Below are positions 8,158 to 63,978 of a DNA stretch of 64,000 nucleotides, piece after piece. Position numbers and translations under genes: made by a program. Numbering within the stretch: position 1 is the first letter of the stretch; the number at the start of each line of letters is the position of its first letter. Source of the stretch: Octopus bimaculoides (Eukaryota); assembly GCF_001194135.2 (NCBI RefSeq), contig NC_068991.1, positions 78,205,396-78,269,395 of the forward strand. The letters run 5' to 3'. The notes under the pieces were generated by a model that saw only the letters and a program-made list of their open reading frames with translations, was not told the origin of the DNA and did no database searches.

Positions 8158-8965
8158 CAGGGTGTTCGGGCTAAATTTGACAGTGTGCATAAAAGAAAAA
8201 AGACAGCACAATATTCTATCCAAAAATAAAAGTACCTTTAAAAAATTTAAAAAATATCAACCAGATTATGACTGAGAGATAACAGTTAATTCAAAGTAAC
8301 CACTCCCAGCTTCCACCATGGCCGCAAAACGGCTCCGAAACCTGGCGCATGCGCTCCTCACTGTATCCGCGGGAAGATCTTTGTGCATTTCCTTCATCTT
8401 GGCCACCTGTTCGACCTTGATTTTGCAGGTGTCATTCTCAACCGCGACCCACACATAGTAATCTGTGGGATTACAATCGGGGGTGGGGGGAGACCAGAGA
8501 TTGGAACTGGTGAACTCTAGGAATTCTCTGACAGCTACTTCTGACTATTTCCAGAGGTAAGGCAAAGAGCTGAATCCTGCTGCCACACATATAGCCATCC
8601 ACCAGCAACCTTCTCCAGCTAGGGATTGACCACAGTCTCTTGAAGCTTCACACAGCCGTCTGAATTGAGTCTAATGCCCTGTTCAAAGATGTGGTTCGGC
8701 ATGATGCTGCCCTGTATTCCTGCTGTGTCCCTTCTAGCTGGCCACAGCTCCGTAGTCTCCGTTGCAGCTGTCCACGTCATGTCTTACAGCATTTACAGTG
8801 TTCACAAAGCATAGAGCAGCAGTTATGACGCCGACATTTTGATATCGGGCACAAATCATGAGGATACGGGTAACTCTTTTCCTACGTCCAGATGGTTCGT
8901 CTAGTGATATTAGCGATTAAAACAGGGCGGCAAGCTGGTAGAAGCCACATCAAAATTTCCATTGG
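8158..8965 (-). mobile_element. internally deleted DD37D (maT-type) Tc1/mariner transposon
   Basis: YVWQQDSA...WSPPTPDCNPTDYYVW with 37 residues between the two Asp after repairing one 1-nt deletion; C-terminus ACARFRSRFAAMVEAGSGYFE; TIR-like CAGGGTGTTCGGGCTAAATTTG at 8158. Confidence 0.8.
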
Positions 8966-8987
8966 CCCCTCTAAGGGGAGGTAGCGT

Positions 8988-9500
8988 CTACTCTGGAAAG
9001 CGGTATCCTATGACTTTTACAAGCCATGCAACATCGGCGATACTGGCCGAAAACAGCGAAACCCCACCAGCGAGACAGGGCGAGACGATGTGATTCATGT
9101 CCTTAAACGCATTTTGCAAATTTGGCGACTGCAAGGAAAATACGGCATTGAGATAATTGTTTTGGGGGTCACCGTCACTCAACGCCAATATATATTTCTG
9201 TATGAAGTTGATCTGACAGATGACTGTTGACAGCTTAATACTGAATATATACAGCTTATAAATAACATTAAAGCGTAGCATGAGAAGTTTTCCAATTTCT
9301 TTTGCCATTATATCAGAGAACATTTTGGGTGAGAGGAAGTGGGGGGGAAACTCAATCACTTTCATGTTACAGATCAATGAGGATATTGCAAGATATGGTC
9401 GAAAGATCTGTGCTAATATGTATTCAACGATAATGCCTACCAATATACAGCTGTAACCATTTTTGAAAGAACGCTTAGAATTTACCTGCAGAACATGTTA
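8988..9500 (-). mobile_element. decayed CR1/L2/Jockey-group RT fragment
   Basis: The ORF has PYLAISSLICNMKVIE (compare YRPISLL..SKVxE), STVICQI, and NAVF...LQNAFKDMNH (compare DFSKAFDxVNH). Confidence 0.4.
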
Positions 9501-9907
9501 AATGGGAGAAAGTCAACGTAAGTAACGAGAGTGGATAAAAAAATACTTCAAGAAAAACATCAACAACATGCGTCGTACAATCGAACGTATAAATATCCAA
9601 TCGGGTGAATAGGATTTTCACAATAGACCAAAAAATCTAAAATGTGCCGAGGTTCTACGTTCCAAACACTTGAAAGAAATATTTGTAGAATATTATTCTT
9701 TTATTTGTTTAAAGTTATTCGATTGCGGCCATGCTGGAGCACCGTCTTTAGTCAAACAAATCGACTCCCAAAGCTTATTCTTTGTAAGCCTTAATGCTTA
9801 TTCTATCAGTCTCTTTTGCCGAACACCGCTAAGTTACAGGGACGTAAACACACCAGCATCGTTTGTCAAGCGATGATGAGGGAACAAACAAACACACACA
9901 CACACAC

Positions 9908-10008
<101 letters not shown>

Positions 10009-10219
10009 AAGAAACATGTTTCTCGTTCCTAATCATCTCGCAACAAACGTAAAGATATTTTAAGCTTTCTTCCGTAGACAGTGGGATCGGTTTTACTCGT
10101 ATCAAGCTAAAAACAAACACGGCAGGAATTACCGATTCCACAAGTGCGAGGATTACCCAAAAAAGTGAAAATATTTCTATAGTTTTCCTTTTTCTTCTTT
10201 TTCTTTTTTGCTATCAATA

Positions 10220-10545
10220 GAGGAGGCGTAGCTGAATGGTTAAAACGCTCGCTGTGATTAACAAGCACGTTGATTCGGGTACAGTCCCGCTGCTCGGCAC
10301 CTTGGGCTAGTGTCTTCTACTATAGCCCTGGACTCACCAATGCGTTGCGAATAAATTTGGTGGCTGGAGAGTGTATGGAAGCCCGTCCTATAAATGAATA
10401 TACTTGTGGTGGTGGTGGGGGGTTCGTCCTTTCTCATCACTTGACGACCGGTGTTGGTTTCTTTAAATCAATAAAAACATTCGAGGTGCTGCTCCAGCAT
10501 GTCCGCTGTCCAATGACTGAAACAAGCGAAAGAATAAAAGAATGC
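10220..10545 (+). mobile_element. SINE family A, older copy
   Basis: Head GGCGTAGCTGAATGGTTAA...CACCTTGGGCTAGTGTCTTCTACTATAGCC; tail CCAATGACTGAAACAAG. Partial copies also at 9696-9900(-), 11135-11340(-), 11578-11740(+), 11975-12110(+), 16680-16920(-), 17590-17820(+), 17860-18010(+), 32770-32985(+), 53945-54165(+) and 51141-51184(-). Confidence 0.8.
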
Positions 10546-11505
10546 AAGAACAAATGTATTCTTCCATAATAAACGCCATGAAAATTCCTATGAATACACG
10601 TCTAGCGTTGGACATAAATGCAGAGATCTGTAAAAACCAGCGAATTCGATATTATCCGGCTGCAAAGGTTTATTGACAATAAGGAACAAATGTAAAAAAG
10701 AAAAAAACAACAACAACAACAAAACCAATAATTAAAAACAAAAACAGTGCTAAAGTGTCTTCAGTTTTTTGTGTCGTCAAAGATTGAAGATATAACTTTC
10801 TATTGTTCAATTTATAATCTGCGTTTTTTCAGCTGAAATGGTTATTGTTTTTTCTCTTTTTTATATTTAGTTCTTTCTTAGTTCTTTTTAATGGTTTCTT
10901 AATACGATTGCCTTTGTCTTTTTTTTTTTTTCTAAATTTGTTTTTTTAAGTTGTTAAGTCACAACGCAGATTGTATGTAGGTTAGCAATTATATATTGTG
11001 TGCAGATGTAATGCGTGGGTAGTGTAGCGCAGACACGCACACACACACACACACGCATGCATATACATGCTACATAATGATTGCCATACTGAAATACGAC
11101 GAGAACCGCGCGTGTGTGTATGTATAATATCTGCATTTATTTTATCTTTTACTTGTTTCAGTCTTGAGACTGCGGCCATGCTGGGGCACCGCTCGTGAAG
11201 GAATTTACTCGAACGAAGCGACCCCAGTACTTTTTCTTTTTGAAGTTTCGTACTTATTCTATCGGTGTGCTACGGGGGACGTGAGCACACCAACACCGGT
11301 TGTCAAGCGGTGGTGGGAGACAACCACAGACACAAACACACACACACACATCTAAACATACTTTATACATATACACACAAACACACACATACATACATAC
11401 ATACATACATACATACATACATACGTACATACACAGACACACACACGTGTGTGCGTCTGTGCGTCTGTGCGTCTGTGCGTGTGTGTGTGTGCGTGTGTGC
11501 GTGTA

Positions 11506-47631: not shown

Positions 47632-49070
47632 AACCCAGCATGGAGTCAATAGCTAACTAGCATTAGTACTTAGTGACACAAATACTTGAGATGGTGAACA
47701 AGTGCTTCATAAGACCACTTCGGGAAGTGATGGTCCTGTAGTTCTTGTCACAGCATGTTTTGGAAAGGGATAGAGGTAGCTCCTTTGATATCTGCCCAGC
47801 ATTGTAAGTCCAAGAAAACAAAACCTAGCCGAATGCTTCCTCATAGAATAACAAAAGCTGTCAATCAGCTTCAATTCACTTTCAAGAAGCTGCATTTCCA
47901 GCAACCTCCTGCAGGTGGTTGAAATGAGCTAGAAGTCATCTTGGATCACCTTTGCCGCTAGATCTATATTTAAGAGTGATTCAGCGAAATGTGGAAATGA
48001 ACACCCTCACTCCCCACCCCAATCTCACTCTTCTGAATCTTCACATTTGCTTCATTTTTTTTCTCTATTTCTGCACTTAAAAAATTGTATTTGTTTAACC
48101 CATCAAATTCCCACATCATCTTAGGTTAAACATTCAATTCTAATTTCAGTGACCTAATTTGGCTTTGACACAGGTATATTCCCAAGACACCTGTAAAAAA
48201 AAAAAACAGCTCCTTCATTCTGTGACTAAGAGACAGTTTACTTCCATCACCTTTTGTCAGCTTCTTTCTGCCAGCTTCAAACTTCACTGAGACTTAATTT
48301 TCACACACACACACACACACACACAAACTTCTTTCTTGTGAGCCTGGAACCCTTTACATTTCCTTTCACACATTTAGTGGAAGACTACCAAAAGACATTC
48401 CATGTAAACAAACAGTTGTCCACAACACACAAATGTGTGTGCTTTCTTCCAAATCCTTTCTCTCTGAATAAATCTGTACAATTCCAGCATCCAAAACAGG
48501 CATTACATGATTAAGAAGAGGCAATAATTATAGACTTTGTAACATCAATTTATTTCAGTAATTCAGAAATTACTTATTACATCTCACTTGTTACACATAT
48601 TCTGTAAAGATTCAGAATAACTATATATCTAATACAGTTCTATATTTAAGAGATGAGGAATTATGTACATTATTTACATTATTTACATTTGACAGATATT
48701 TGTCATCATTTGTGGTGGTGGTGGTGGTGGTGGTGGTGGTGGTGGTGGGAAGTGGGGTGAGGGTTTTTCTTCATCATCATCATCATCATCATCGTTTAAC
48801 GTCCGCTCTCCATGCTAGCATGGGTTGGACGATTTGACTGAGGACTGGTGAACCAGATGGCTAACACGATTCATGTACTGGCAGTTTTTTCATATTTTGG
48901 AATTTCAATTAAAGGATTATCACTTGTGATAAACTTGCAAACAAATCATAAATCAATGTGTATTTCAATGTTTCCTTTTTCTTTTTCATTTTTTTTTTTA
49001 TATAATGCTAGTTTTTATAATCTTGTCATATAAAAGAAAAACAAGAATTCCTTGATGCTGTACCTAACAG
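44740..49070 (+). other. candidate U12-type intron in the vasohibin 5' UTR
   Basis: GTATCCTTTT at 44740; TTCCTTGAT at 49048-56, 15 nt before the acceptor ctaacAG (49070), which is 21 nt upstream of the ATG. Confidence 0.5.
46663..46914 (+). repeat. GC-rich minisatellite, 21-22 bp unit TAGTAGTTGCGGGTGGGACCCC, running into a gap
   Basis: About 11 visibly tandem, slightly variant units. Confidence 0.9.
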
Positions 49071-49091: not shown

Positions 49092-49304
49092 ATGTCAGTT
49101 CGTAAGGCAACTTTACCTTTAAGGCAACACAAACACAATGATAAATTAAAGCATAATGCCGGCTGTTTCTTTTGGGTCAACCAAAATGGTTTACCACTGA
49201 AAGAAGAGACGTGGGAAAGAATGTGGTCATTTGCTGCCAAGCAACATCCGGATGGAGAGAATGTTATTGAAAGCGTTAGAGTTCTTAGTGATAACCTTCC
49301 AAAG
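49092..49304 (+). CDS. VASH: vasohibin coding exon C1 (71 codons)
   Basis: ATG at 49092 with an in-frame TGA immediately upstream (49089-91); encodes GLPLKEETWERMWSFAAKQHPDGE; donor AAG|GTAAAT at 49305, phase 0. Confidence 0.9.
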
Positions 49305-49890
49305 GTAAATTATTGTATAATTCTCTAATATTTGTGAATTCTTCGAAAATGAAAGATTAATTTAAAAGCTGTGACAGTAGAAATGTTGAGGGCTTGACAA
49401 TGGGAGGTTAATGTAAGAGCCACTGCAGAAGGAGTGTCGAAAGTTGACAGTGGGAGGGTAAGAGAATAGCCAGAACAATATTTGTCCTGAGGAGGTTAGT
49501 TAATGGGAAGTTAATGTAATAGCCACTGCAGTGGGAGTGTCATGAAGTTGACAGTGGGAGGATCAAGGAATAGCTCCAGCGGTGGGGCTGAAAGTGGGAG
49601 GATCATCAAATAGCTGTAGCAGTAGTAGGAGTGATAAGGCTTTGAGAGTAGGAGGATAATGAAATAACAACAGCAGTGGGAGTGTCAAAGATTGAGAGTG
49701 GGAGGATCTTAGAAAAGCAGCAGCAGCAGCAGCAGTGAAATGAAGTTGATTGATGGAGGGGTGGGTGGGAGAGTAGAAGATCAGAAAACAACATGAACTG
49801 CATAATTAATTAGATTCGTTAGCTTACAGGTATTTCAACAAAGTAAATGAAACAATGCTATGCAATGCATACTACTCCATATTACCTGAG

Positions 49891-49926
<36 letters not shown>

Positions 49927-49952
49927 GAAGCTGGATCTTTATATTATACATT

Positions 49953-49983
<31 letters not shown>

Positions 49984-51182
49984 TTGTGCATGTGTGTATG
50001 TATGTATGTGTGTATGTACGTGTGTGTGTGTATGTATGCATATATTTGTGTATGTATGCATGTATGCATGTTTATGTAGGTGCATATGCATGTGTATGTA
50101 TATTGTATATGTATATATATTTACATATGCACATATGTATGTATGTATGTATGTATGTATGTCATTGTTCAATTTTATCAGGTCATCCCATAAGTTCTGT
50201 CCGGTGTTATCTTTTTTAAAATTGAATGAAATTTAATAGTATTTTAGAATGTCTAATGGAATTAAAAATTATTTTTATGCATTTGTGTACATTTAAACTA
50301 ATTATATATCATTTTACAGAATAATAGAATTAAAATTTCTTTGATTAAAACCCTTTATAACATGGAAGTATCCAAAGAGCATTTAAGGCACATAATGCTT
50401 TATGAGTATAAAAAAAAGAAATTCTGCAGCCGAAGCGACTCGAAACATGCACTCAGTTTATGGGAAAGAATGCTTGAATGAAAGAACTTGCAGAAGATGG
50501 TTTGCAAAGTTCAGAAGTGGAGATTCCAGCCTTGAAGATGAAGATCGAACAGGACGTCCAGTTGAATTTGATGATAAGCTCCTTGATGCATTACTTGAAG
50601 AAAATCCTGCATTATCATTTGAAGAATTGGCAATAAACCTTAGTTCAAACCATACAACTGTTCATCGTCATCTTCAACAACTTGGAAAGGTTCCTAAACT
50701 TGGAAAATGGGTGACTCATGAATTGTCCGAAAGCAACCGTAAATCCCGAGTTGACATCTGCTCTTCTCTCCATTGTCACGAACTCATTTCACCCGAGAGG
50801 TTCTTCTCTCTATCTGGTGGGATTGCAAAGAAGTAATTCACTTTGAATTGTTACTACATAATGCAACAATCACTGCTCAAGTCTACTGTCAGCAATTAGA
50901 GCATTTGAACCAAGCTTCGAAGAGAAAAAGACCTGCTTTAGTGAATTGAAAAGGAGTGATGTTTCATCAGGACAATGTGCGACCCCAAACTGCAAAGATC
51001 ACATCACAGAAGATCAAAGAGCTTGGTTGGGAAAAAATTCCTCATCCACCTTATTCTGCCGACCTTTCTCCTTCAAACTACCATTTGTTTCATAGTTTAC
51101 AGAATCATTTAGGGGACATAACTTTCACAAGCCAGGAGGAGGTTAGTAAGCAAGCTACTTGCCACACACCCACTCCTGTGCC

Positions 51183-51257
<75 letters not shown>

Positions 51258-51357
51258 TGGAGTAAGCATATAAATGTGAAACAAAACTGTCCAGCGAACA
51301 GGAACGTGAAACTCTGAGTAACAGTTTTTGTGATATTTCTGCTGCTTTTCAATAAAG

Positions 51358-51398
<41 letters not shown>

Positions 51399-53391
51399 GC
51401 ATGCATACATACATACATACATACATACATACATACATGCATACATACATACATGTATATACACACACACACAGATATATGCATGTACACACTACATACA
51501 TACTGCTACTCCCTGATCCCGTCACTCGTCTTTACTCTTACGACACCAATGAAAAATGGAACCAGTTTTTCTTCCCTCAAACTTCCTCTCTCACTGACAT
51601 AGATTTCACTATTATCTCTTTGGATGTTGTTCTCCTTTCAGCTCTGTTCTGAATATGAGAGCAATCCATTGAAGTTCAGCAAATCTTAATATTTTAGTCT
51701 GTTTCTTTTTTCCTGGATCTCTATATTCTAAATAAAACACATGGTCTTTCTTATTCTGTACAACAACCGAGCCAGTGTGATTTTTCTCTTTGTTGTGATT
51801 CACAAAGTCATTTGGAATAAGGAAATAAAAAGCTTTGCTGGTTACTTTCTTTCCTTTCTTGGTGCTCTGTTGCCAAGTCCCAGAGGCCGTACTCTCTGTA
51901 CTAAATAGAGAGAGTTGCCCCTTAAACTTCCTTCGGGTGCAACACAGTGCAGCGTTTGTGTTGAAATACAGAAGGTGACGTCATGCACATTGTGTTGTTG
52001 CAGGTAGTATTGCTTCACATATCTCCTCCTTTCAACGCCCACCACCAGCTCACTCATGCCAAAAGCAAGGTGAGTGCATAAGCTTTTCATGCTGGTCCAT
52101 AACCTCTCCATTACCAAGATCCCAATCAAACCACCATGCTATAACCAACGGCAACTATGTCCCTGTGAGCATTGACTAATTGGTTGGAGATTACACTCAC
52201 TCACACGTGTCACGCATCTATGTATACGCACAGACACGCATACATATATATATACACATACATTCACAAACACACACAGAGATTACTTCACAAATGCCAT
52301 GCTTTGTTCTTCCCCCGCCCCCCCAGCTAATCTCTGCATGCATGACAACATGACAAATTGTAATCCCTTGAACCAGATATATTTGACTTCCACAAATGTT
52401 GTTCTCTCTGATTAGTTTACACTTGTGTCGTAGACCTGCTTGAACAGATCTTACCAAGCTTATTCAATAGTTTTATCATGAGTCAATAAGAGACCCTCAC
52501 CATGTTCCCTCAGCCTGCTAGAAATAACAGCCAATTCTCCTTTAAATTGGCCAAAGACGGTTATATTATGTCTATCAAGACAGGATGGTCATGGCTGGAA
52601 AACTTTTGGTCATATGTCTGATAGGCCAAGCCTGATTTGAAATGGACAGCAACAAAACCAACAACATTAGTGGACACATAATGAAGTTTCAGTTAGGAAA
52701 TTATAATAATGATTTAATTCTTAAACTTTTATGTTGATTCTATAAATGAATTAAGAAAATAGGAAACTTATTGTGTCTTGGGCTGGTCATTATGCCAATA
52801 ATAATAAACACCTGAACTGGTTTAATATCACTTCTGTATTGAACCAGAGCAGGTGTTTATTATTATTGGTGCAATGACCCTCCCAAGACACAACATGGTT
52901 TGTTTCAACACATGAATTCACATCAAGAACCTTGCAAACCCATAATGAGATAAGAAAATAAGAAAACACATTGGAAATTTTATAGGACACAAAATAGTTT
53001 AAGTAATTAATTAGTTATATATACCTGTCTTTAAATAGCCATCCCAATATGGCTGCCTTTGAATAATTGGTTAGATGCACCTGTTTTTAAGGAGCTGAGG
53101 TGCAGCTGTGTGGCTAAGAAGTTTGTTTCCTGACCATGTGGTCTCAGGTTCAGTCCCACTGCATGGCACTTTGGGAAAACATCTTCTACTATTACCCTGG
53201 ACTAACTAAGGCCTTGTGAGCAGACTTAATGGATGGAAACCATCCTACGAGCAGTGTTGTTCCTTTCCAGTCTTCTAAACATGGGGAAACAGGTGAGGGT
53301 TGGTGACTGGAAGGGCATCCAGCCATAGAAAATCTCTCTCAACAAATTCCATTTGATGCATGCAAGCATAGGAAAGTGGACATTAAACAGA

Positions 53392-53450
<59 letters not shown>

Positions 53451-56400
53451 CGATGACGATGGTATACTTATCTTTGCATAGTTGGTTAAATATGCTTGTC
53501 TTAATCTATATATTGATTTTTGTTTATCCTTTCCCCCACCCAAATCAATTCTATCTGGATCAATGAAGAGGTAATTTCTATACCAGTTATTGTGGTTGTT
53601 GACTTAAGTGTGCATACACACACACACTGTGTGGAGAAATATTTTCTTTGACAGGAGAAAAGATCGAAGAGAGAGAGACAGGATATGTGCTGTCCTTAGG
53701 ACAGTCCTGAAAAAAAAGAAAGTACAGGACTTAGAAAAATTCAAGGACTGCTGCATTGTGTGTGAATCTGAGTGGGGAATAGAATCATAATTAACTGGTT
53801 CTCCTGTATTCTCTTTTACCCAAAGCCAAGACATTTTCAGTACTCCCTCATATACGTGTGTGTGTTTTTTGTGTGTGTGTGTGTGTGAATGTGTATGTAT
53901 ATACTTATGCACACACATGTGTGTACATGTATGTTTGTGCATCTGTATTTATGTTTGTCTCCCACCAAACCTAAGAAACCAATACCAACTGCTGTTGGTT
54001 TGTTTATATCCCCATAACTTAAAAGCTTGGCAAAAGACATCAACAAAATAAGTATGATACTTAAAAAAAAATAAGCGCTGAGGTTGATTTGTCTGACCAA
54101 AACCTTTTATAGCAGTGCTCCAGCATGGCTGGAGTCCAATCACTGAAACAAGTAAAAGATAAAACATTTTCAATTGAAATTCCTCAATGTGGTTCTCTTG
54201 TTCCCCTAAAAGAAGCATGACATTATCATTACAGAAAACTATTTTGGAAAAATGAGATTTTTTATCCAAAGAATGATTCTATTTAATTTGCTATTTCTTG
54301 ATCTGATTTCTGTATAATTCTTGAACCATGGCTGTTTTTCTTTGCACCAACAGATTCCATTTCCAACGTCAACCATACATTCTAATATGAGTGTCTACCA
54401 GAAGATAATTGAAATCCAGAAATACATAGAAGCTCTTGAGTATCCTTTGTAGAAATTAAAAGAAAATGGTATTCTCCATTTATATATTTTTTTTATGGTT
54501 TTGTCAGTAAAGAATGAAGGGCAATGTTGATGGTTCTTTTACAAGATCCCAAAGACAAGTAGAGGGAAAGAAGGAAGAATTTTATATCCTTATATCAGAG
54601 ACATGATCCAAATGTTTGCAACAGAATGGATTCTGCCACTCTGCTAAAAAAAAATACCCAAGAATTAATCAGTGGTTTTTAACCATTTTAATGCCAACCG
54701 TCCTGAAACAAACACTTAAAGTGATCTGAATTAAAATCTTCCATAAAGATTTCCTGTTAAATTTCTTCTAAATACCAGCTTAAAAACAGCAAAGGTATTT
54801 TAATAAATTTTTCATTATATTTAAAATTAGCTGAAGAAAGGGTAGTGTATTCCAGCAGAAATATGGTAACAAACTGGTTAAAGTAATCTCAATTAAAACC
54901 TTCCTAAAGCTTGGAATCAAAATTTTAAAACAAAGATATTTACAGCAATCAAAATAAATCACTTCATAATTTTTTACTTGTTTAATTTTATTTTTATCCA
55001 AAGTTATTAAGCTCATGTTTAACTTATTGGCCCCATTTAGATTTAAAAAGCCATTAAACTTAATCAAGTCCCTCAGAATCTACTGAAACCCTTTTTAGTT
55101 TCAGAGTCTCTTCAAACTGTTTGGAGCCCCTAGAATTAATGAGGCCCTCTAAATTACCTTATTATGCTTTGAATTAGCTCTTTTTCAAATAGTGCCCTTT
55201 TTCAAAAATACTCTGAGCCCGTTTCCTTTTAATTTGAGGGTAATCAACAGTAATGCATTATCTCAACAAAGTAACATCAACTGTTTGGATGAAACATCTT
55301 TTCCACAGTTGGAAAGAATAAAAGGTCATTTGTGATCAGCTCTCGGTCAAACAAAGTTGGCTGCTCTTAGTATCATGTGCATTGAAGCAGATAAACTCCA
55401 TGAAAAAAAAAAAAGTTTTGATGACTCAATCAAAGCCTTTATTGTTTATAAATAAGAAAAAAATACAGTTTAATTTATTCTGTTCTTGGCTAAAAAATCT
55501 TTTAATTATTTATATTTCAGTAAAAACTGTGATACCTAATTTTAGTTTTCTCAAACTATTCATATCTAAAAAAAAAACCTGCTCTTAATAATTTAATTTA
55601 TTTATATTCTGTCAGTTTATTATGTGCAATATTTTATGTTGGCTTTTCATTTCTTCCTTAAATACTGATCCTTTAGATCAAACTGCATTTAGTTTTGTTG
55701 TTCAACTCTGTTCATACCAAACTGTAATGACTATTTGCCATGTTGCAATTCAATGGTGTGATACAGTCTTTTGGTTGTTTGGTTGCAGCAGCCAAATTCA
55801 TTTGACATGAACAATGAGATTTTGATTGGCTTTAGAAATCTAAACAGTTAAAAACAATGTATGCAAAACCACAGGGCACCCCAACCAAAACCAAAACCAA
55901 AAAAAAATAAGCCTATTGGCCCAAGGATTCCAGCAGATCTAAATCTGCCACATTTCAATATCCATATTATTTTACTTAATTGACTTTAGATACAATTATA
56001 CTGGGACACAGTTTTTCCATATCCAGAAGTCTAAACCTCTTTNNNNNNNNNNNNNNNNNNNNNNNNNNNNNNNNNNNNNNNNNNNNNNNNNNNNNNNNNN
56101 NNNNNNNNNNNNNNNNNNNNNNNNNNNNNNNNNNNNNNNNNNNNNNNNNNNNNNNNNNNNNNNNNNNNNNNNNNNNNNNNNNNNNNNNNNNNNNNNNNNN
56201 NNNNNNNNNNNNNNNNNNNNNNNNNNNNNNNNNNNNNNNNNNNNNNNNNNNNNNNNNNNNNNNNNNNNNNNNNNNNNNNNNNNNNNNNNNNNNNNNNNNN
56301 NNNNNNNTATATATATATATATATTTATAATGTGGGCAGCTGGGTGCAATATAAACCGTACAGGCAAAATTTAGTCATCACTAATTGTGACCGTATGTGC

Positions 56401-59400
56401 TACAAACACATATATTGCTAGAAATAGCAGTTAAACCACTCATAGCTGCATGAAAATACATTTATATATTCTAAGAGGATAGATAACTGCCCCATGAGGG
56501 AAGCAAAGCTGGAACACTGGATTGCAAAGTTTGCATCATCTGCTCCAGCTGAGGCAGGATCCAGGCTGTTCCATGAGCATCTATTCAATCTGGCATGATG
56601 TTCCCTAATGCCATACGTAGTGGACCAAAGACTTCACATTGTGTATTTCTAGGATCCTGAAAGAAAACTTGGGGTTATTTAAGCACAGCTTAAAGGGAAA
56701 CTCCATTACTCCAATATATTTCTTTGTGTTATTCGTGCTGCTGCTGCAATCATTGCCATTCCTGCTGTTTATAAGAGTTATAAGAGTTCAGGGGTGTCAA
56801 TGACTCTCACCATAACACTGGGTTAATCAGGTGGCGCTTGGGATTGGAGGGGAAGTTTGGTTTGTGATCTTTGATGGTGATAAAAGCATCTCTCTCTCTT
56901 TCTCACTCTCTCTCTATACATATATATGTGTGTGTATTTATATATATTTTTATACCAAAAATTAGGCAAAAATATTGTATCTGTTAACAAACTTAGCAAA
57001 ATACTCACAATTGAGTTTTTGTATATATATTGACTTAAATGAGAGCTCAAAACTGATCCAGTGAAAATACTTTATTATAATAATAATAATGAAAATGACT
57101 TATGATCATTATGCACGAATCGATCTGGATATTGCATCGAAATGATCATAGGTCATTTTCATTATTATTATTATAATAAAGTATTTTCAATGGATCAGTT
57201 TTGAGCTCTCATTTAAGTCGATATATATATATATATATCATCATCATCATCATCGTTTAACGTCCGCTTCCCATGCTAGCATGGGTTGGACGATTTGACT
57301 GAGGACTGGTGAAACCGGATGGCAACACCAGGCTCCAATCTAATTTGGCAGAGTTTCTACAGCTGGATGCCCTTCCTAACGCCAACCACTCAGAGAGTGT
57401 AGTGGGTGCTTTTACGTGTCACCCGCACGAAAACGGCCACGCTCGAAATGGTGTCTTTTATGTGCCACCCGCACAAGCCAGTCCAGGGGCACTGGCAACG
57501 ATCTCACACGAAAATCCTACGGGAGCCAGTCAGGCGGTACTGGCAACGGCCACGCTCAAAATGGTGCATCTCATGTGCCACCCGCACAAGAGCCAGTCCA
57601 GGGGCACTGGCAACAATCTTACTTGGCTTGCTGGGTCTTCTCACGCACAGCAAAGATAAAGAGAGAGAGATTACATATATGTATGTGTGTGTGAGTGTGC
57701 AGGTGCGCACGCATGTGTGTGTATGTATATATTTATATGTATGTATGTGTATATATGTTCCAATCTTTCAGCTTAATGGAAACAGCCAAAGAAATTATGA
57801 AGGAATGCCTTCCAATCAAATGTCTTGAAGCTGTCATACTTGCTGTGTATCCTTCACTCAAAGACAATTAAACATGTTTTCTCAATATTCTCCCAAAGGA
57901 AATCCAAATAATTTTAAAGTACTTTTTCACAACTTTTGTGTTGTAGAAGGGGTTTGTATTTTTTGTCATCATTTTGGAGGAGTGTACGTCATTCTTATTA
58001 TCATATTTATTGGGTGGACTCTTTTTAATTATCATATTTATTGGGGAGGAGTCTTTTTAATTATCATATTTATTGGGGTGGAGTCTTTTTAATTATCATT
58101 TTTAGAAAGCTTGCCATTTTTATTATCATTTTAGGCCAGCCTCTCCAACACATTTTTTTATCATGTTCTTTTAAGGTTTTACCTTTTTTTTTTTTATTAT
58201 CATGAGTGGTGTGAAGGTGCGTGGCTTAGTGGTTAGGGCATTTGGCTCACAAACATAAGGTTGTGAGTTCAATTCCTGGTGACGTGTTCTGTCCTTGAGC
58301 AAGACACTTTATTCCCCATTGCTCCAGTCCACTCAGCTGGCAAAAATGAGCTGTACCTGTATTTCAAACGTGGTTCTCGGGGGAGATTCAGCATGGCACA
58401 AAGTGTGGCAAGGCTGGCCAATACAGGGAATAAAATTACAAAAAGAAAACAGGCTTGTGGCAAAACAATATAGGTGCTTACTGTACATGATCGTTGGCAT
58501 AACCTGCTAGAAATAACATCTAAATCTCCCTTAAATTCAAATGTCTGCCCTGGATGGTTTGAATTGACAACCTTCATACTCTCTCTCTCTCTCTCTCTTT
58601 TGACTGCGGCCATGCTGGGGCACTGCCTTTAGTTGAGCAAATTGACCCCAGGGCTTATTCTTTGTAAGCCTAGTACTTATTCTATCGGTCTCTTTTGCCG
58701 AACCGCTAAGTTACGGGTGATGTAAACACACCAGCATCGGTAGTCAAGCGAAGTTGGGGGGACAAACACATACACACAAACATATACACACACATACATA
58801 TATATATATACATATATACGACGGGCTTCTTTCAGTTTCCGTCTACCAAATCCACTCACAAGGCTTTGGTTGGGCCGAGGCTATAGTAGAAGACACTTGC
58901 CCAAGGTGCCACGCAGTGGGACTGAACCCGGAACCATGTGGTTGGTAAGCAAGCTACTTACCACACAGCCACCCCTGCGCCTATAATTTTTTTTATGTCC
59001 CTTCATCCTGGATAGAAAAACCTATGTATTTAAGGTAAGGTGACTATTCTAGATGGTTAGGTGTGCCGTAGCAATGAAGAATTAAGTATTTTAGTAGCAA
59101 TGGAGCATTTATATCTAGTTTCCAACCAGGGATCTACAAACCCCTAGCAATCTACAAGGGGGGTCTATAATCTGAGTCAAACATTTCTTGAGTGAACAGA
59201 CCTTTTGAAATTTAGGGTCTGTGAGAAAAGTCATTTCCATAAAAAGAGATCCTTTGCAGTGAAATGATTGGGAACCATGCAACCACTTGATTTTTCTATA
59301 AATAGCAGCAAAATTTCCCTTGCATCACTTCCTCTTGTTACAAAACAAGAAGGACACAGTGGATGATGTAGTTGTAGATGTAGAAAGAGTTGAGATGGTC

Positions 59401-62400
59401 ATGTATGGAATGCCTTTGATCATAGATCAACTCAAACAAGGTTGACTAAACTAAGGCAAAATTACATTAACGAGAAATTCTCTGCCCAGAAACACAATGT
59501 GATGCTTGTCATGGACTTGAACCCACAACCCGTGACCAGGTTGTCCAATCACTTTATCCACTCAGCTATTATGACCTCGGCTCATTAATGACATAAATAT
59601 ACAAGAAAATTAATTCTAGCCCAACCTGGAATCAAAACAGAAGGTTGTGGGTTCAATTCACAAGGTGCTCCACCTCAACAAACATATCCTTGTTGCTGTT
59701 GTTATCATTGTTGTTTAACCCCAGGTTAGTCCTGATGGAAGAGATTTAGGATTGAAGACATCCCAGCCATGACCAACGCAGCCTTTTTTCTTTCTGCTGG
59801 TCACTTGTGGTCAAGGGTCACTTTGGTTGCATGTGCCATCTTTGCACTGCTTTAGCTGCCTGTACTGTTGTGACCAAGCATAAACAATCTCTCAAAGCTG
59901 CCCCACCTCCTTTGATCCAGTGAAATGTCCCAGATGTGACTGCTGATGGGAGAGAGGGGTCACACCAACGTTTTTCTGGGGCTTATTTTTGCTGAGGAGA
60001 CATGAGCAACATGAAATAAAGTTCCTTACTCAAAGACACAATGTAACACCTGGTCCAAAAATTGACCTCACAACCTCTTGATCATCAACCCAACAACATA
60101 AACATTCAGCCACATGCCTGCACTTCTAGACAATGTTTCCATGACTCTGTTATCCTATGTATCCTTCCATTTTTCATAATAGTAAGGTATGATTTTTGAG
60201 AGATTTAGTAGCTATTTCTAGCAGACAAGGCAACCACATAGTGGTTTCTTCCATTACCCATTCTTAAATATCAATACTTTTAAATAACCAATCAATAAAA
60301 TTGAAGAATTTCCTGAACGAGACAAAGTTATATGACAAATGGGATTCCAGTTCTTGAAAGGTTTTCAATTGGGTTCAAGACAGTCTTCAAAACTGTGGAA
60401 TATCGACATGTTGTCTTGGGCCTCTACTACAAAGGGGCTTACGGTGCTCTTGGCATGAGTCGGAGGGAAAAACTCATGTATAAACCATTAGTTTATTCGG
60501 TAAGAGGATTTTCTTTTTATCTTTTGACCATTTTCTTTGATAATTTATAGGGTCCCCAACTTTATCACCCCTTTTTTTTAAATGAGTTTTCCCACAGACC
60601 CCAGGATATTGAAAGGTCTGTCAGCTTAACATGCTCACAGACCCCCAGTACAACCATTGCGGATCACCAGGGGTTTGTCGACCTCATGTTGGGAACCATT
60701 GATTTATAGCTTCAACTGCTGATCTGTCCCTGACAGAATTTTCACTGTCTCTGGCACAAATTTGCCACACATCATCATTGGTATCTCTTTGTGTGAAGAA
60801 TTTCATTCCTTTGAATTGTATAAACTATAGGTTATCTACAGAAGCCATTTTTTTTTTCTCTCAAAAAAACAAAAATTGGCAAATCAGACAAGAGAAACTG
60901 TATGGAATCATCCATGAATCCACTTGTAAGTGCATAACTGTGTGTTACTGATGCACATACCACCATGCATATGCATTTGCAATATGTATGTGCATAGCTG
61001 TGCATTGCCAATGCAGGCCACTATGCACAAATATGTTGACACTAAATTGATTGACAAACACAGTGGAAATGAGAGACTCTGGTAGATATATGAGGCAACC
61101 CCTATCACCCTACACTAGAGATGAAAAAAAGGAAAAGACTTATTGATAATAGATTGGTAAACATGCTTTGATATGTGCCGCAGGCTGGTTCACATCCACT
61201 GCTTTGTTAGTTTGCACACATTGGTGTGTAAATAAACATCCATCTGTGTTTCATGTTTGTGTGTGTGTTTATATGCAAGTGTGTAGTATTGTATGTTGGT
61301 AGAGGAATTCCTTATTTTTTATTCTCTTGGATTATTAGAAAGAATGGTGAAGAGATTTGTAAAATTATAATTTGATTCACATTGATGAAGTCACGGATGG
61401 CAACAAAAGGATTCTGAGAAGCGTGGCTGATTGATTGATTGGCCAAGTGATTAGACAAATATTCGATTGGTCAAACAATTGGCTAAATGTCTAGCAGACA
61501 GGTATAACCAATACCAAAGAAGAGTAATTCCCAGAAACCAGCCAGTCTGTTGGTTCCTGTCAATGCTAGATGGGAGTTGCCCACTCCCTTGTTTGCAATA
61601 TAACAGACAGATATTCTTTTCTGCTCTAGGCACAAGACCCAAAATTTTGGTGGAGGGGGATAGTCAATTAGATCAATCTCAGTACACAACTGGTACTTAA
61701 TTTATCGACCCCCAAAAGGATGAAAGGCAAAGTCGACCTTGGCAGAATTTGAACTCAGAACGTAAAGACAGACAAATTACTGAAAAGCATTGCGCCCAGC
61801 ATGCTAACGTTTCTGATATTGTGTCATTAACCTGCTGGAGGATGTGTTCTCCTGGGGTTAAAAAGAGTAGTAACAGTGTTCTGTACGGAACAACCCCATT
61901 GAGGTGGTAACAACCATTACTTCGAAGTAGAGTAACTACTTGCCTCTCATAGAGATTTTGGAACTAGCCACTTTACTTGCTGATTAACTAAAGGACTAAT
62001 TGGTTAAGTGATTAACTACTTGAGTAATAATAAGTAATAATTTGAAAAAGTGAAATAGAACCAGTGCATGTGTTTTGGTTGGCATTATGACCCTCCCAAG
62101 ATACAACAAAATCTTTTTCATCACATGGCTTCTCGTCCGGAACCTTACAAACCAAATAAAAAATTTTTTTTTTAATTCAGAATCTTTTATAAGTTTTAGA
62201 TTTTGAGTTGAGACGTTGCATTTGAATAAAAACAATAAAAACATCCACTATTATTACTTTCAGAGTTTACATGAATTGATATTGAATTACCAGCTGTCTT
62301 ACAAAGACTGTAAGTTATTCGTTTTCCCAGTTTAGTCTGGTTGTAAGGTGTTGTGTTGCTCTGGCAATGAGACAGCATGGGTTGATGCTCGTTGCTTACA

Positions 62401-63978
62401 ATAGGTGCATGATAGTTCAAGATATGTATGTGTGCATGTGTATGTGTGTGTGTGTGTGTGTGCATTTGTACGCTGTATGCATACATACATATGTACATAT
62501 ATACGTTTGCATATATGAATGTGTATGTGTATATGCATGTATGTTATGAATATCTGTTATGTATGTATATATGTGTATATGTCACAAGTGCACCATAACT
62601 TACTACCTAGCTAAAATCATCATCATCATCATCGTTTTAATGTCCTATACTTGCATAGTTTAGATGGAATGCATTGAGGCAAATTTTCTGCAGCCGGATG
62701 CTCTTCCTGCTGTCAACCCTCATCTGTTTCCAGAAGGATAATGTTTCTCCCTGGCCAGACGTGTTTTCATAGAAGATCCTAATCAAAAGACACCAACTTG
62801 TATGTTGTTGACATTCATTTGCAACAATCACACGAAGTCCAGTCAAGATTCTAACACCACTAGAATCCTGGTTGACTGTAGCTAATAACCAAATAAAAAC
62901 GTCCATTCAGATCTAATTAAACACGACACCATAAAGAATATAAAGAAGATACTAAGAAACCAGATTCCATTGCCATACCAGAAAATGAGAGAATTCTAAA
63001 GAGTACAAAGACAAGAAATAAGAGTACAACCAGTCTGGTGAAAAACGTACTCAACACCAAACCAATGAGAATGAATCCACAACTCCATAGACATCACAAT
63101 AACAGTTCTTCCATTCAAACAAGTATAGACCTCTCATCTTCTGAACCTTTCAGAATCTTTATGTATATAAAGAGTATGTTGGTTGCAGTGGTTCCTCCTT
63201 GTTTCAGAGAATTTCTTTCTTTCTTTTCATTTTACTTCCTTATTTATGTCTCTGATGGCTGGCAAGGCTGATTTCTGTCTGGAGCAATTGTCCTCAAACT
63301 TTACATCTCATGGTCAGTGAAGGCCTTGATTGCATTTGGCAGCCCTTTCATCATGACCATTTAACCTCTTCATGCTGGCTTGGGTTGAATGATCCAGCGA
63401 GTCACAGGGCTACATCAAACTCTGGTACCAGCTTTGGCATGGTTTCCACAGTTGGATGCCCTTCCTAATGCCAACCAATTAACAGGGTGGGCTTTTTTTT
63501 TCTTAGCACCAGCACTAGTGAGGTTGCCAGGTAATTAGCAAGACAAAAAAGTTGGTAGAAGAAAATGGAAAAAGAAAGAAAAAGAAGAAAAAACCTCCAC
63601 TTAACGGATGGGAGAGATATAAAAAGGTGAGGCTGTGATTGTAAGCCAGGTATTGAAGGACTAAGTGGTATGACAGAGGATAATTCTTGAATGGATGAAC
63701 AAATTGAGAAGGAACTTCGAAAGATCATCGTTTTTTTCTTTGTTTTAATCATTATTTTTGTATTATCTTTTAATGGCAACAGTTGTCATCATTGTAAAAT
63801 CTTTTAATTATTTTTCTAATTAGCAAATATATCTGTCTTACATTTTTGTTTATTTTTAAGGATTTTATTTACTTCTTTTCTTTTATTTCTTCATCCAGAT
63901 GGTCACAAACTGCTAAAACTTCATATTGGTTTACCAATTACCCATAATCCTACATCATGTAGAAGTATTGTATGGAAG
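49092..63978 (+). CDS. VASH: Vasohibin family tubulinyl-Tyr carboxypeptidase; 7 coding exons (C1-C7), 3' end beyond the window
   Basis: join(49092-49304,54354-54439,55990-~56046,57772-57846,60328-60499,62264-62309,63899-63978) gives a stop-free, phase-consistent protein: ...[31 protein letters not shown]...LPK/IPFP...IQKYIEALE/YNYTGTQFFHIQKSKPLx(G)/LMETAKEIMKECLPIKCLEAVILAV/YMTNGIPVLERFSIGFKT...YRHVVLG...YGALGMSRREKLMYKP.../SLHELILNY...Y/GHKLLKLHIGLPITHNPTSCRSIVWK. It is collinear with human VASH1 motifs recalled from memory (TWERMW, YNHTGTQFF, LPIKCLEAVIL, RHIVLG, GALGMSRR). It is probably a co-ortholog of VASH1 and VASH2. Confidence 0.95.
50176..51141 (+). mobile_element. mariner (DD34D, Hsmar1/cecropia-like) transposase pseudogene in vasohibin intron
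   Basis: TA+TCAGGTCATCCCATAAG terminus; ATG at 50362; HLRHIMLYEY, frameshift in an A-run, HTH RTGRP, GKWVTHEL, HQDN, YSADLSPSNYHLF. The segment with the first Asp is deleted and the 3' end is truncated. Confidence 0.9.
51283..51328 (+). ncRNA. degenerate hammerhead-like fold inside vasohibin intron
   Basis: AAAACUGU-CCAGCGA-AC(AGGAAC)GU-GAAA-CUC-U-GAG-U-A|ACAGUUUU. Stem I is 8 bp, stem III is ACUC/GAGU and the triplet is GUA, but the core deviates at U4, G5 and A6. Confidence 0.5.
53715..53852 (+). mobile_element. mariner 3' end fragment
   Basis: QDLEKFKDCCIVCESEWGIES* resembles the mariner C-terminus; terminus-like TTCAGTACTCCCTCATA followed by TA. Confidence 0.5.
54354..54439 (+). CDS. 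VASH: vasohibin coding exon C2 (86 nt)
   Basis: Acceptor tttttctttgcaccaacAG; IPFPTSTIHSNMSVYQKIIEIQKYIEAL+GA; donor GTATCCTTTG (U12 type), phase 2. Confidence 0.88.
54440..55989 (+). other. U12-type (minor spliceosome) GT-AG intron, phase 2
   Basis: The 5'SS is GTATCCTTT exactly at the exon end. A branch-like TTACTTAAT (55972-80) lies ~10 nt before the AG, with no long polypyrimidine tract. Confidence 0.88.
55990..56042 (+). CDS. VASH: vasohibin coding exon C3 (last ~4 nt and donor lost in N gap)
   Basis: Acceptor ttacttaattgactttAG; A+YNYTGTQFFHIQKSKPL, then the gap starts at 56043. Confidence 0.9.
57031..57220. mobile_element. fold-back MITE inserted in (TA)n, inside vasohibin intron C3-C4
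   Basis: 57031-57110 pairs with 57141-57220 (3 differences); terminus CGACTTAAATGAGAGCTC; TA repeats on both flanks. Confidence 0.85.
57238..57655 (-). mobile_element. SINE family C with GGAAGGGCATCCAG motif and (GAT)n tail (RTE-related)
   Basis: The minus strand ends ...CATGCTAGCATGGGAAGCGGACGTTAAACGATGATGATG. Related copies at 48770-48870(-), 62617-62830(-), 63340-63540(-) and 53285-53460(+). Confidence 0.75.
57772..57846 (+). CDS. VASH: vasohibin coding exon C4 (75 nt) with catalytic Cys
   Basis: Acceptor caatctttcAG; C+LMETAKEIMKECLPIKCLEAVILA+GT; Cys codon TGT at 57821-23; donor GTATCCTTCA (U12 type), phase 2. Confidence 0.93.
58213..58540 (+). mobile_element. SINE family D (clear tRNA head; CORE/V-like central segment)
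   Basis: A box TGGCTTAGTGG, B box GTTCAATTCC, then CCTTGAGCAAGACACTT...GTCCACTCAGCTGG and CTAGAAATAACA. Related pieces at 26458-26690, 20745-20910, 37470-37680, 52480-52665, 59290-59460 and 59960-60120(-). Confidence 0.75.
58598..58982 (-). mobile_element. SINE family A, full-length young copy in vasohibin intron
   Basis: Near-identical to 35050-35438; its CpGs are retained despite CpG-poor surroundings. Confidence 0.9.
59113..59281. mobile_element. hAT-like MITE relic
   Basis: Decayed termini ...GTTTCCAACC / TTGGGAACCA, resembling CAGTGGTTCCCAAC-type TIRs. Confidence 0.4.
60328..60499 (+). CDS. VASH: vasohibin coding exon C5 (172 nt) with catalytic His and Ser
   Basis: Acceptor tttcctgaacgagacaaAG; T+YMTNGIPVLERF...YRHVVLG (CAT 60407-09)...GALGMSRR (AGT 60458-60)...KPLVYS; donor TCG|GTAAGA. 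Confidence 0.95.
60547..60702. mobile_element. hAT-like MITE relic
   Basis: TAGGGTCCCCAAC ... GTTGGGAACCATTG inverted termini. Confidence 0.45.
62264..62309 (+). CDS. VASH: vasohibin coding exon C6 (46 nt)
   Basis: Acceptor ttattactttcAG; SLHELILNYQLSYKD+T (compare human TLSELVLDFEAAYGR); donor ACT|GTAAGT. Its phases 0/1 fit both neighbours. Confidence 0.82.
63899..63978 (+). CDS. VASH: vasohibin coding exon C7 (80 nt)
   Basis: Acceptor tttcttcatccAG; AT+GHKLLKLHIGLPITHNPTSCRSIVWK (compare human WHVLKKVKLGQSVSHDPHSVEQIEWK); donor AAG|GTAAGA. Confidence 0.88.

What the first reader, a model, noticed from the sequence alone, without database searches (positions are those of the whole stretch)
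54440..60327. Catalytic Cys of vasohibin sits on a two-exon cassette bracketed by two phase-2 U12 introns: a built-in minor-spliceosome off switch
Seen: both introns flanking exons C3+C4 have GTATCCTT donors and U12-like branch sites ~10 nt from the AG, while the C4 acceptor looks U2-type. Established: U12 and U2 splice sites do not normally pair. Inference: the only compatible skip is donor 54440 to acceptor 60327. It would remove C3+C4 (~132 nt, 44 aa) in frame (CTT GA|T TAT = L-D-Y) and delete IKCLEA with the catalytic Cys, while keeping the N-terminal SVBP-binding region. The product would be a stable dead or dominant-negative detyrosinase controlled by minor-spliceosome activity. The reciprocal back-splice (57847 to 55989) would give a C3+C4 circle. 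From memory, human VASH2 has 355- and 311-aa isoforms (a 44-aa difference), which would fit a conserved mechanism, but I could not verify this.
Basis: partly seen in the sequence, partly recalled or inferred. Interest (0 to 1): 0.72.

Follow-up and report, generated by a model that had tools for sequence, protein, structure and literature searches.

The report
Octopus vasohibin catalytic cassette between minor introns
In the octopus vasohibin (tubulin detyrosinase) gene, the two small exons that carry the catalytic cysteine lie between two rare minor-spliceosome introns. This layout, and the 44-residue-shorter cysteine-less isoform it permits, are ancient and already in databases for human and octopus, but whether the isoform does anything is unknown.

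Summary
The window is Octopus bimaculoides vasohibin. Intron I2 (54440-55989) and intron I4 (57847-60327) both start GTATCCTT, carry TCCTTAAC-like branch sites 9 nt before the AG, and are phase 2. They bracket exons C3 and C4 (57 + 75 = 132 nt, 44 codons).

The N gap hides the last 4 nt of C3 and the donor of the middle intron. Its flanks are colinear with O. sinensis and O. vulgaris, where that donor is U2-type GTGAGT.

The predicted skip (…EAL-D-YMTNG…) is an annotated product. RefSeq XP_052827975.1 (O. bimaculoides) and XP_036362942.1 (O. sinensis isoform X2) carry exactly this junction.

The U12-U2-U12 layout with 57/75-nt exons recurs in limpet, acorn worm, amphioxus, and mammalian VASH1 and VASH2. 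MIDB already lists two minor introns each in mouse Vash1 and Vash2.

The "off switch" reading is not shown. The skip itself needs the minor spliceosome. Loss of U11 in mouse is reported to give Vash2 intron retention. The stability and any dominant-negative action of the product are untested. This is an orthologue of a known case, with a useful hypothesis attached.

The parts
49092..49304 (+). Vasohibin exon E1 (ATG to ...LPK), followed by U2-type donor GTAAAT
54354..54439 (+). Exon E2 (86 nt, IPFPTS...YIEAL), ends in phase 2 (CTT GA|)
54440..55989 (+). Intron I2, GT-AG U12-type. Donor GTATCCTTTG at 54440. Branch site TACTTAAT at 55973-55980, 9 nt before the AG.
   Evidence: Orthologous U12 intron. 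Listed in MIDB for mouse Vash1/2.
55990..56046 (+). Exon C3 (YNYTGTQFFHIQKSKPL..). 53 nt are readable (55990-56042). The last 4 nt are inferred from sister species and lie in the gap.
56043..56307 (.). Assembly gap. It hides the 3' end of C3 and the I3 donor. The flanks are colinear with O. sinensis and O. vulgaris, where the interval is 1064 nt and the donor is GTGAGT.
56047..57771 (+). Intron I3, U2-type, phase 2. The donor is unreadable here. The acceptor is ttccaatctttcag.
57772..57846 (+). Exon C4 (75 nt, LMETAKEIMKECLPIKCLEAVILA). Catalytic Cys codon TGT at 57821-57823, aligned to human VASH1 C169.
57847..60327 (+). Intron I4, GT-AG U12-type, phase 2. Donor GTATCCTTCA at 57847. Branch site TCCTGAAC at 60311-60318, then purine-rich GAGACAAAG to the AG.
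   Evidence: Orthologues. MIDB.
60159..60166 (+). Third GTATCCTT, inside I4 and 169 nt before its acceptor. It is also present in O. sinensis and O. vulgaris. Significance unknown.
60328..60499 (+). Exon E5 (172 nt). It carries the other catalytic residues, aligned to human VASH1 H204 and S221.
62264..62309 (+). Exon E6 (46 nt)
63899..63978 (+). Exon E7 (80 nt). The remaining three coding exons lie beyond the window.

Best explanation
The region is the catalytic core of the Octopus bimaculoides vasohibin (tubulinyl-Tyr carboxypeptidase) gene. Exons C3 (57 nt) and C4 (75 nt, with the catalytic Cys) are separated by a U2-type intron. They are bracketed by two GT-AG U12-type introns, and all three introns are phase 2.

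This U12-U2-U12 arrangement is inherited from the bilaterian ancestor and persists in vertebrate VASH1 and VASH2. A U12 donor pairs productively only with a U12 branch site and acceptor (established knowledge). So the only type-compatible exon skip joins donor 54440 to acceptor 60327. That removes both exons together, in frame, and gives a protein 44 residues shorter that lacks the nucleophile.

This product is annotated in octopus and in many vertebrate VASH2 genes, including the curated human 311-aa isoform.

Shown: the gene structure, its conservation, and the existence and exact junction of the annotated isoforms.

Inferred: that the isoform is a minor alternative product whose abundance depends on recognition of the internal C3-C4 exon pair, not on a dedicated switch. 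Also inferred: that loss of minor-spliceosome activity acts mainly through intron retention, which meets early stop codons.
For: Gene identity.

U12 signals in the window.

Same architecture, with 57 + 75 nt exons and phase 2 throughout:
- O. sinensis and O. vulgaris
- Lottia, Branchiostoma, rabbit VASH1 and warthog VASH2
- Saccoglossus, where the I2 donor is lost in a gap

MIDB lists two minor introns each for mouse Vash1 and Vash2. They lie 1321 and 783 nt apart, which fits two small exons plus one intron.

Skip isoforms with the exact junction:
- P0002 and P0255, octopus
- human NP_079025.2 and about 30 vertebrate VASH2 entries
- The junction residue varies between Q and H, as expected for a phase-2 CA|N codon.
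- Skipping in silico in the suid locus gives 311 aa, 304/311 identical to the human isoform.

Retention meets stops quickly. U11-null mouse shows Vash2 minor-intron retention.
Against: No RNA-seq reads were examined. The octopus isoforms are Gnomon models.

In O. bimaculoides the skip form is the only model in its protein cluster. It may have been favoured because the assembly gap breaks C3.

No skip isoform of VASH1, or of any invertebrate other than octopus, appeared among the 240 proteins inspected.

Olthof et al. 2019 record only a cryptic-exon event for human VASH2 in their table of alternative splicing above 10%. The skip may therefore be rare in the tissues they sampled.
Confidence: 0.8

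Rival explanations
1. One reading: a regulated pseudoenzyme switch. The cysteine-less 44-residue-shorter isoform is a functional, selected product, either dominant-negative or an SVBP sink. The paired U12 introns are kept so that the cassette is removed all-or-none, and the isoform ratio follows minor-spliceosome (U11/U12 di-snRNP) availability.
For: The same precise skip is annotated from octopus to human. The architecture and exon lengths are unchanged across Bilateria. One U11/U12 di-snRNP would suffice for the skip, whereas inclusion needs two (inference). The AF2 model of the skip form keeps the N-terminal helices and the beta-sheet with similar confidence, pLDDT 81.4 against 82.9, but this is not a test of stability.
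Against: The skip also needs the minor spliceosome. U11 loss is reported to give retention. The conservation can be neutral: most human minor introns are still minor in molluscs. The frame is preserved automatically once the phases are equal and the core tolerates no indels. The cassette holds 19 of 52 invariant residues and two core helices. VASH core domains enclose SVBP, so a folded product is doubtful. The function is listed as unknown. The tunicate Styela has lost the arrangement.
Confidence: 0.15
2. The skip isoform is splicing noise or an annotation artefact with no stable protein. In O. bimaculoides the model would be forced by the assembly gap in C3.
For: The gap removes the C3 donor. 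The older O. bimaculoides model A0A0L8HU07 is visibly mis-spliced and ends at the gap. No assembled transcript with the junction was recovered (an uninformative search).
Against: O. sinensis has no gap here, yet carries both X1 (305 aa) and X2 (261 aa). The human form is a curated NP_ RefSeq and also appears under the GenBank name FLJ12505 (EAW93373.1). Independent annotations in many vertebrate classes give the same junction.
Confidence: 0.25
3. The GTATCCTT donors are chance matches and the introns are ordinary U2-type.
For: Three further GTATCCTT copies in the window are not at recognisable exon ends.
Against: Both sites lie exactly at homology-defined exon ends. They are paired with TCCTTAAC-like elements 9 nt from the AG. 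The donors are not preceded by AG at -2/-1. They are orthologous to introns with the same signals in six other lineages and to catalogued mouse and human minor introns.
Confidence: 0.02

Closest known systems
Mammalian VASH1 and VASH2 as minor-intron-containing genes (MIDB; Olthof et al. 2019, PMC6717393)
   Same: Two U12-type GT-AG introns at the same codon positions and phase, flanking the same 57- and 75-nt exons with a U2 intron between them.
   Different: In octopus there is a single vasohibin gene, the introns are longer and repeat-rich, and the N-terminus is shorter. I found no published U12 classification for the octopus introns.
Human VASH2 311-aa isoform (NP_079025.2, transcript from cDNA FLJ12505)
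   Same: Exact deletion of the C3+C4 cassette. It is in frame, with a hybrid junction codon, and lacks the catalytic Cys.
   Different: The junction residue is H (CA|T) in human and D (GA|T) in octopus. The human isoform is curated from cDNA, whereas the octopus ones are computed models. The function of both is unknown.
Alternative splicing around minor introns and exon-bridging between the two spliceosomes (Olthof et al. 2019 and 2021, PMC6717393 and PMC8034651)
   Same: Exons next to minor introns are defined by cross-talk between U11/U12 and U1/U2. Exon skipping around minor introns occurs and varies by tissue.
   Different: Here two minor introns bracket a two-exon unit, so the compatible skip joins two U12 sites. 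I found no paper that describes this for vasohibin.
Genes with two U12-type introns (about 50 in human, for example SCN and CACNA1 channels; Turunen et al. 2013, PMC3584512)
   Same: More than one minor intron in one gene.
   Different: In vasohibin the two introns are near neighbours, share a phase, and enclose the active-site nucleophile.

Membership tests
U12-type (minor) intron, GT-AG subtype | 5' splice site matching /GTATCCTT | tested here: met
   I2 has GTATCCTTTG at 54440 and I4 has GTATCCTTCA at 57847, each 8/8 to the consensus core.
U12-type (minor) intron, GT-AG subtype | TCCTTAAC-like branch site about 10-15 nt from the 3' splice site | tested here: met
   I2 has TACTTAAT (2 mismatches) and I4 has TCCTGAAC (1 mismatch), each followed by 9 nt to the intron end. 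The sister species have TGCTTAAC and TCCTGAAC.
U12-type (minor) intron, GT-AG subtype | No strong polypyrimidine tract; no AG at donor positions -2/-1 | tested here: inconclusive
   The I4 tail is purine-rich (pyrimidine fraction 0.40). The I2 tail scores 0.70, the same as the U2-type I3 in the sister species, so this measure does not separate I2. The donor -2/-1 bases are GA and GT, not AG.
U12-type (minor) intron, GT-AG subtype | Orthology to introns already classed as minor | tested here: met
   Same position and phase as the two minor introns that MIDB lists for mouse Vash1 and Vash2. The 5'SS and branch-site strings match the rabbit and warthog loci.
U12-type (minor) intron, GT-AG subtype | Removal depends on U11/U12/U4atac/U6atac | not testable with these tools
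   Only indirect evidence: mouse Vash2 minor-intron retention rises in U11-null tissue.
Vasohibin / tubulinyl-Tyr carboxypeptidase (PF14822) | Match to the Pfam Vasohibin domain | tested here: met
   296 bits against a cut-off of 24 for the window-encoded exons. 95% identity to the O. vulgaris orthologue.
Vasohibin / tubulinyl-Tyr carboxypeptidase (PF14822) | Catalytic Cys-His-Ser positions (human VASH1 C169, H204, S221) conserved | tested here: met
   These positions align to C136, H171 and S188 of the octopus protein and are invariant in 41 sequences. C169A and C158A are the published dead mutants. The identity of H204 and S221 as the other catalytic residues is from memory, and describes the triad as Cys, His and Leu.
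Vasohibin / tubulinyl-Tyr carboxypeptidase (PF14822) | Detyrosinase activity with the SVBP partner | not tested
   SVBP was not sought in the window. An activity assay is needed.
Conserved 44-residue-shorter, cysteine-less VASH isoform (human VASH2 311 aa) | Precise E2-E5 junction that removes the 57+75 nt cassette in frame | tested here: met
   Octopus P0002 and P0255 and human P0241 share the junction position.
Conserved 44-residue-shorter, cysteine-less VASH isoform (human VASH2 311 aa) | Transcript actually present in the animal | not testable with these tools
   Only annotation-level evidence is available. No reads could be examined.
Switch governed by minor-spliceosome level | Isoform ratio changes with minor-spliceosome activity | not testable with these tools
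   Logic argues against a simple switch, because both isoforms need U12-type splicing. The only data found show retention.

The most novel reading that the evidence does not exclude
The cysteine-less, 44-residue-shorter vasohibin is an ancient functional pseudoenzyme isoform retained from the bilaterian ancestor. The same-phase U12-U2-U12 layout is kept because it forces all-or-none removal of the catalytic cassette. The skip-to-inclusion ratio rises when U11/U12 di-snRNP is limiting, since the skip needs one di-snRNP and inclusion needs two. Minor-spliceosome activity would then be coupled to tubulin detyrosination.
Probability: 0.12. Interest if true: 0.8.

Novelty: new member of a known kind. 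Interest (0 to 1): 0.45.

Why it matters
Vasohibins set the level of detyrosinated tubulin in neurons, muscle and mitosis. A catalytically dead isoform with exactly the same junction is annotated in both human and octopus, and papers still list it as 'function unknown'.

Recognising that it is the one skip allowed by two flanking minor introns gives a concrete hypothesis. That hypothesis can be tested cheaply with existing RNA-seq from minor-spliceosome mutants and with a simple co-expression assay with SVBP.

If the isoform turns out to be noise, the locus is still a clean textbook case of how intron type limits which exons can be skipped. It also shows U12 introns being missed by older gene models.

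Tried and rejected
1. A search with an 86-aa peptide spanning the junction, meant to find assembled octopus transcripts with the skip, returned only 8 short fragments. It did not even recover P0002, so it says nothing either way.

2. Genomic look-ups of the skip isoforms (P0002, P0241) failed because only the longest product per gene is indexed. P0006 and P0051 were not on record.

3. Full-text searches for vasohibin with 'minor intron' or 'minor spliceosome' gave nothing relevant except one preprint. A search for circVASH gave one uninformative mention.

4. I tested whether VASH1B (204 aa) is read-through of the second U12 intron. In rabbit the read-through gives 255 aa, so the human tail could not be checked with the loci at hand. 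This remains an inference from exon counts.

5. AF2 models of the full and skipped proteins have similar confidence (82.9 and 81.4). AF2 does not measure stability, so I did not use this for or against a stable product.

6. tRNA and Rfam scans of 54000-61000 found nothing.

7. The GTATCCTT copies at 18313 and 44740 have no open frame running into them, so I treated them as chance.
Full report
**What is in the window**

A database search with the joined exons confirmed the identity. The best hit is 95% identical, to 'tubulinyl-Tyr carboxypeptidase 1-like [Octopus vulgaris]', followed by hundreds of PF14822 proteins. Pfam gives Vasohibin at 296 bits.

The exon map, with every boundary checked base by base:

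| Exon | Coordinates |
|---|---|
| E1 | 49092-49304 |
| E2 | 54354-54439 |
| C3 | 55990 into the gap |
| C4 | 57772-57846 |
| E5 | 60328-60499 |
| E6 | 62264-62309 |
| E7 | 63899-63978 |

Three more coding exons lie beyond the window. The skip product of the window's exons is identical to the first 199 residues of O. bimaculoides XP_052827975.1, so the window is from that species.

**The gap, tested first**

The N run at 56043-56307 cuts C3 after 53 nt and removes the donor of the middle intron. The sequence on both sides is colinear, and in the same orientation, with O. sinensis (L001) and O. vulgaris (L002) at about 90% identity. The hidden interval is 1064 nt in O. sinensis, so the 265 N is only a placeholder.

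In both sister species C3 is 57 nt, ending ...CCTCTTTGCTT|GTGAGT, and C4 is 75 nt. The frame across the gap, and the figure of 132 nt (44 codons), therefore rest on the sister genomes. They are consistent with everything that can be read in the window.

**The splice signals**

GTATCCTT occurs five times in the window, against 1.77 expected. Two copies are exactly the first bases of the introns after E2 (54440) and after C4 (57847).

The two intron tails carry U12-type branch sites:
- I2 has TACTTAAT at 55973-55980.
- I4 has TCCTGAAC at 60311-60318.

Each element is followed by 9 nt to the intron end. The I4 tail is purine-rich. Neither donor is preceded by AG.

The C4 acceptor has a pyrimidine run and no branch-site match. 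In the sister species the I3 donor is GTGAGT, so the middle intron is U2-type. All three introns are phase 2.

**Conservation**

I mapped proteins onto genomic loci with an exact spliced aligner. The same U12-U2-U12 arrangement, with 57- and 75-nt exons and phase 2 throughout, is present in:
- O. sinensis and O. vulgaris
- the limpet Lottia, amphioxus, rabbit VASH1 and warthog VASH2
- the acorn worm Saccoglossus, where the I2 donor is lost in a gap

The tunicate Styela has lost it. There, a differently placed U2 intron replaces I2, I3 is gone, and the I4 position holds an 81-nt intron starting GTATATGC.

The supplement of Olthof et al. 2019 (MIDB) lists two minor introns each for mouse Vash1 and Vash2. 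Their spacing (1321 and 783 nt) fits two small exons plus one intron. Their 5'SS and branch-site strings match my mammalian loci.

A later survey states that most orthologues of human minor introns are still minor in molluscs. The octopus case is therefore an expected member of a catalogued class. About 50 human genes have two U12 introns.

**The skip isoform**

Joining donor 54440 to acceptor 60327 gives CTT GA|T TAT, which reads L-D-Y. This is not hypothetical:
- O. sinensis XP_036362942.1 'isoform X2' (261 aa) differs from the 305-aa form only by this 44-residue deletion.
- O. bimaculoides XP_052827975.1 (278 aa) has the same junction.
- Human NP_079025.2 (311 aa, in an 85-member cluster) reads ...NYMKTL-H-YLTNG... 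and lacks YNHTGTQFF...LPIKCLEAVILG, including Cys158.
- About 30 VASH2 entries from mammals, marsupials, birds, crocodile, turtle, snake, amphibians and teleosts show the same junction. The junction residue is Q or H, as a phase-2 CA|N codon predicts.
- Joining the U12 donor of I2 to the U12 acceptor of I4 in the suid VASH2 locus yields 311 aa. That product is 304/311 identical to the human isoform.

A 2019 review lists the 311-aa isoform with 'function unknown'.

**What the deletion removes**

The octopus protein aligns to solved human VASH1 structures over residues 54-308. Its Cys136 sits on C169, and the other catalytic positions (H204, S221; my recollection of the structural papers) fall in E5. 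C169A and C158A are the standard dead mutants.

In a 41-sequence alignment the 44-residue cassette (14% of the protein) holds 19 of the 52 invariant columns. In the AF2 model the cassette spans a loop, helix 117-130 and the start of helix 136-146, which carries the Cys at its N-terminus.

The AF2 model of the skipped protein keeps the other elements at similar confidence. This says nothing about stability. VASH core domains are described as enclosing SVBP. So 'keeps the SVBP-binding region' and 'stable' remain assumptions.

**Mechanism**

*Shown.* The gene structure, the types of the splice signals, their conservation, and the annotated isoforms.

*Established knowledge.* U12-type and U2-type sites do not pair productively. 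Skipping C3 alone or C4 alone would also be in frame, but each would need a mixed pair. The only compatible skip therefore takes both exons.

*Inferred.* The skip arises when the internal sites of the C3-C4 unit are not recognised and the outer U12 sites pair.

The 'off switch by minor-spliceosome activity' does not follow. The skip itself is a U12-type splice. The one experimental datum I found is increased Vash2 minor-intron retention in U11-null mouse tissue. In the window, retaining I2 or I4 meets a stop after 3 or 8 intron-encoded residues. So the ordinary consequence of weak minor splicing is loss of product.

A dose-sensor version, in which the skip needs one di-snRNP and inclusion needs two, is conceivable but untested.

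**Verdict**

The components are already known. Vertebrate VASH genes are listed as carrying minor introns. The 311-aa isoform is in RefSeq. The octopus skip models are in RefSeq too.

I did not find anyone connecting these facts. No paper in the library contains both 'vasohibin' and 'minor intron'. The link is that the cysteine-less isoform is the single skip permitted by two flanking minor introns, and that both the layout and the annotated isoform reach from octopus to human. That is a modest but testable point.

Noticed in passing
window 49092-56042 (UniProt A0A0L8HU07, P0256): The older O. bimaculoides gene model (85 aa) joins E1 directly to C3 out of frame (...LPK-IQLYWDTVFPYPEV) and stops at the gap. 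It skips E2, probably because the U12 intron was not recognised.
   Followed up: partly
window 60159-60166; L001 17593; L002 14694: A third GTATCCTT lies inside I4, 169 nt upstream of its acceptor, and is present in all three Octopus species. The surrounding intron is about 90% identical anyway, so this conservation is not informative. It could act as a U11-binding decoy or a cryptic donor.
   Followed up: partly
window 57022-57229: A near-perfect palindrome inside I3 (two 89-nt arms, 97% complementary, 30 nt apart). It looks like a MITE or foldback element.
   Followed up: partly
window 48776-48870 and 57232-57640: A repeat beginning (CAT)n CGTTTAACGTCCGCT...CCATGCTAGCATGGGTTGGACG occurs just upstream of E1 and again inside I3. 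By eye, similar sequence is seen near 62618 and 63380. It is probably a dispersed octopus SINE-like family.
   Followed up: partly
L008 (Styela clava) 964-1459: The tunicate vasohibin has lost the paired U12 introns. The I4 position keeps an 81-nt intron with donor GTATATGC, which looks like a U12-to-U2 conversion. I2 is replaced by a phase-1 U2 intron 15 nt downstream, and I3 is absent.
   Followed up: partly
L004 (rabbit VASH1) intron 8584-11417; human VASH1B from the literature: VASH1B (204 aa, 'four exons') ends after the C4-equivalent exon. It would therefore arise by not splicing the second U12 intron, giving another isoform truncated at a minor intron and lacking the His and Ser. This is inferred from exon counts and was not verified on human DNA.
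   Followed up: partly
window 18313 and 44740: Two further GTATCCTT copies on the + strand have no open frame leading into them. I treated them as chance matches.
   Followed up: yes
window, whole: The window has 17 N gaps, 10-988 nt long, so it comes from a fragmented assembly. Any exon near a gap should be checked against O. sinensis or O. vulgaris.
   Followed up: no
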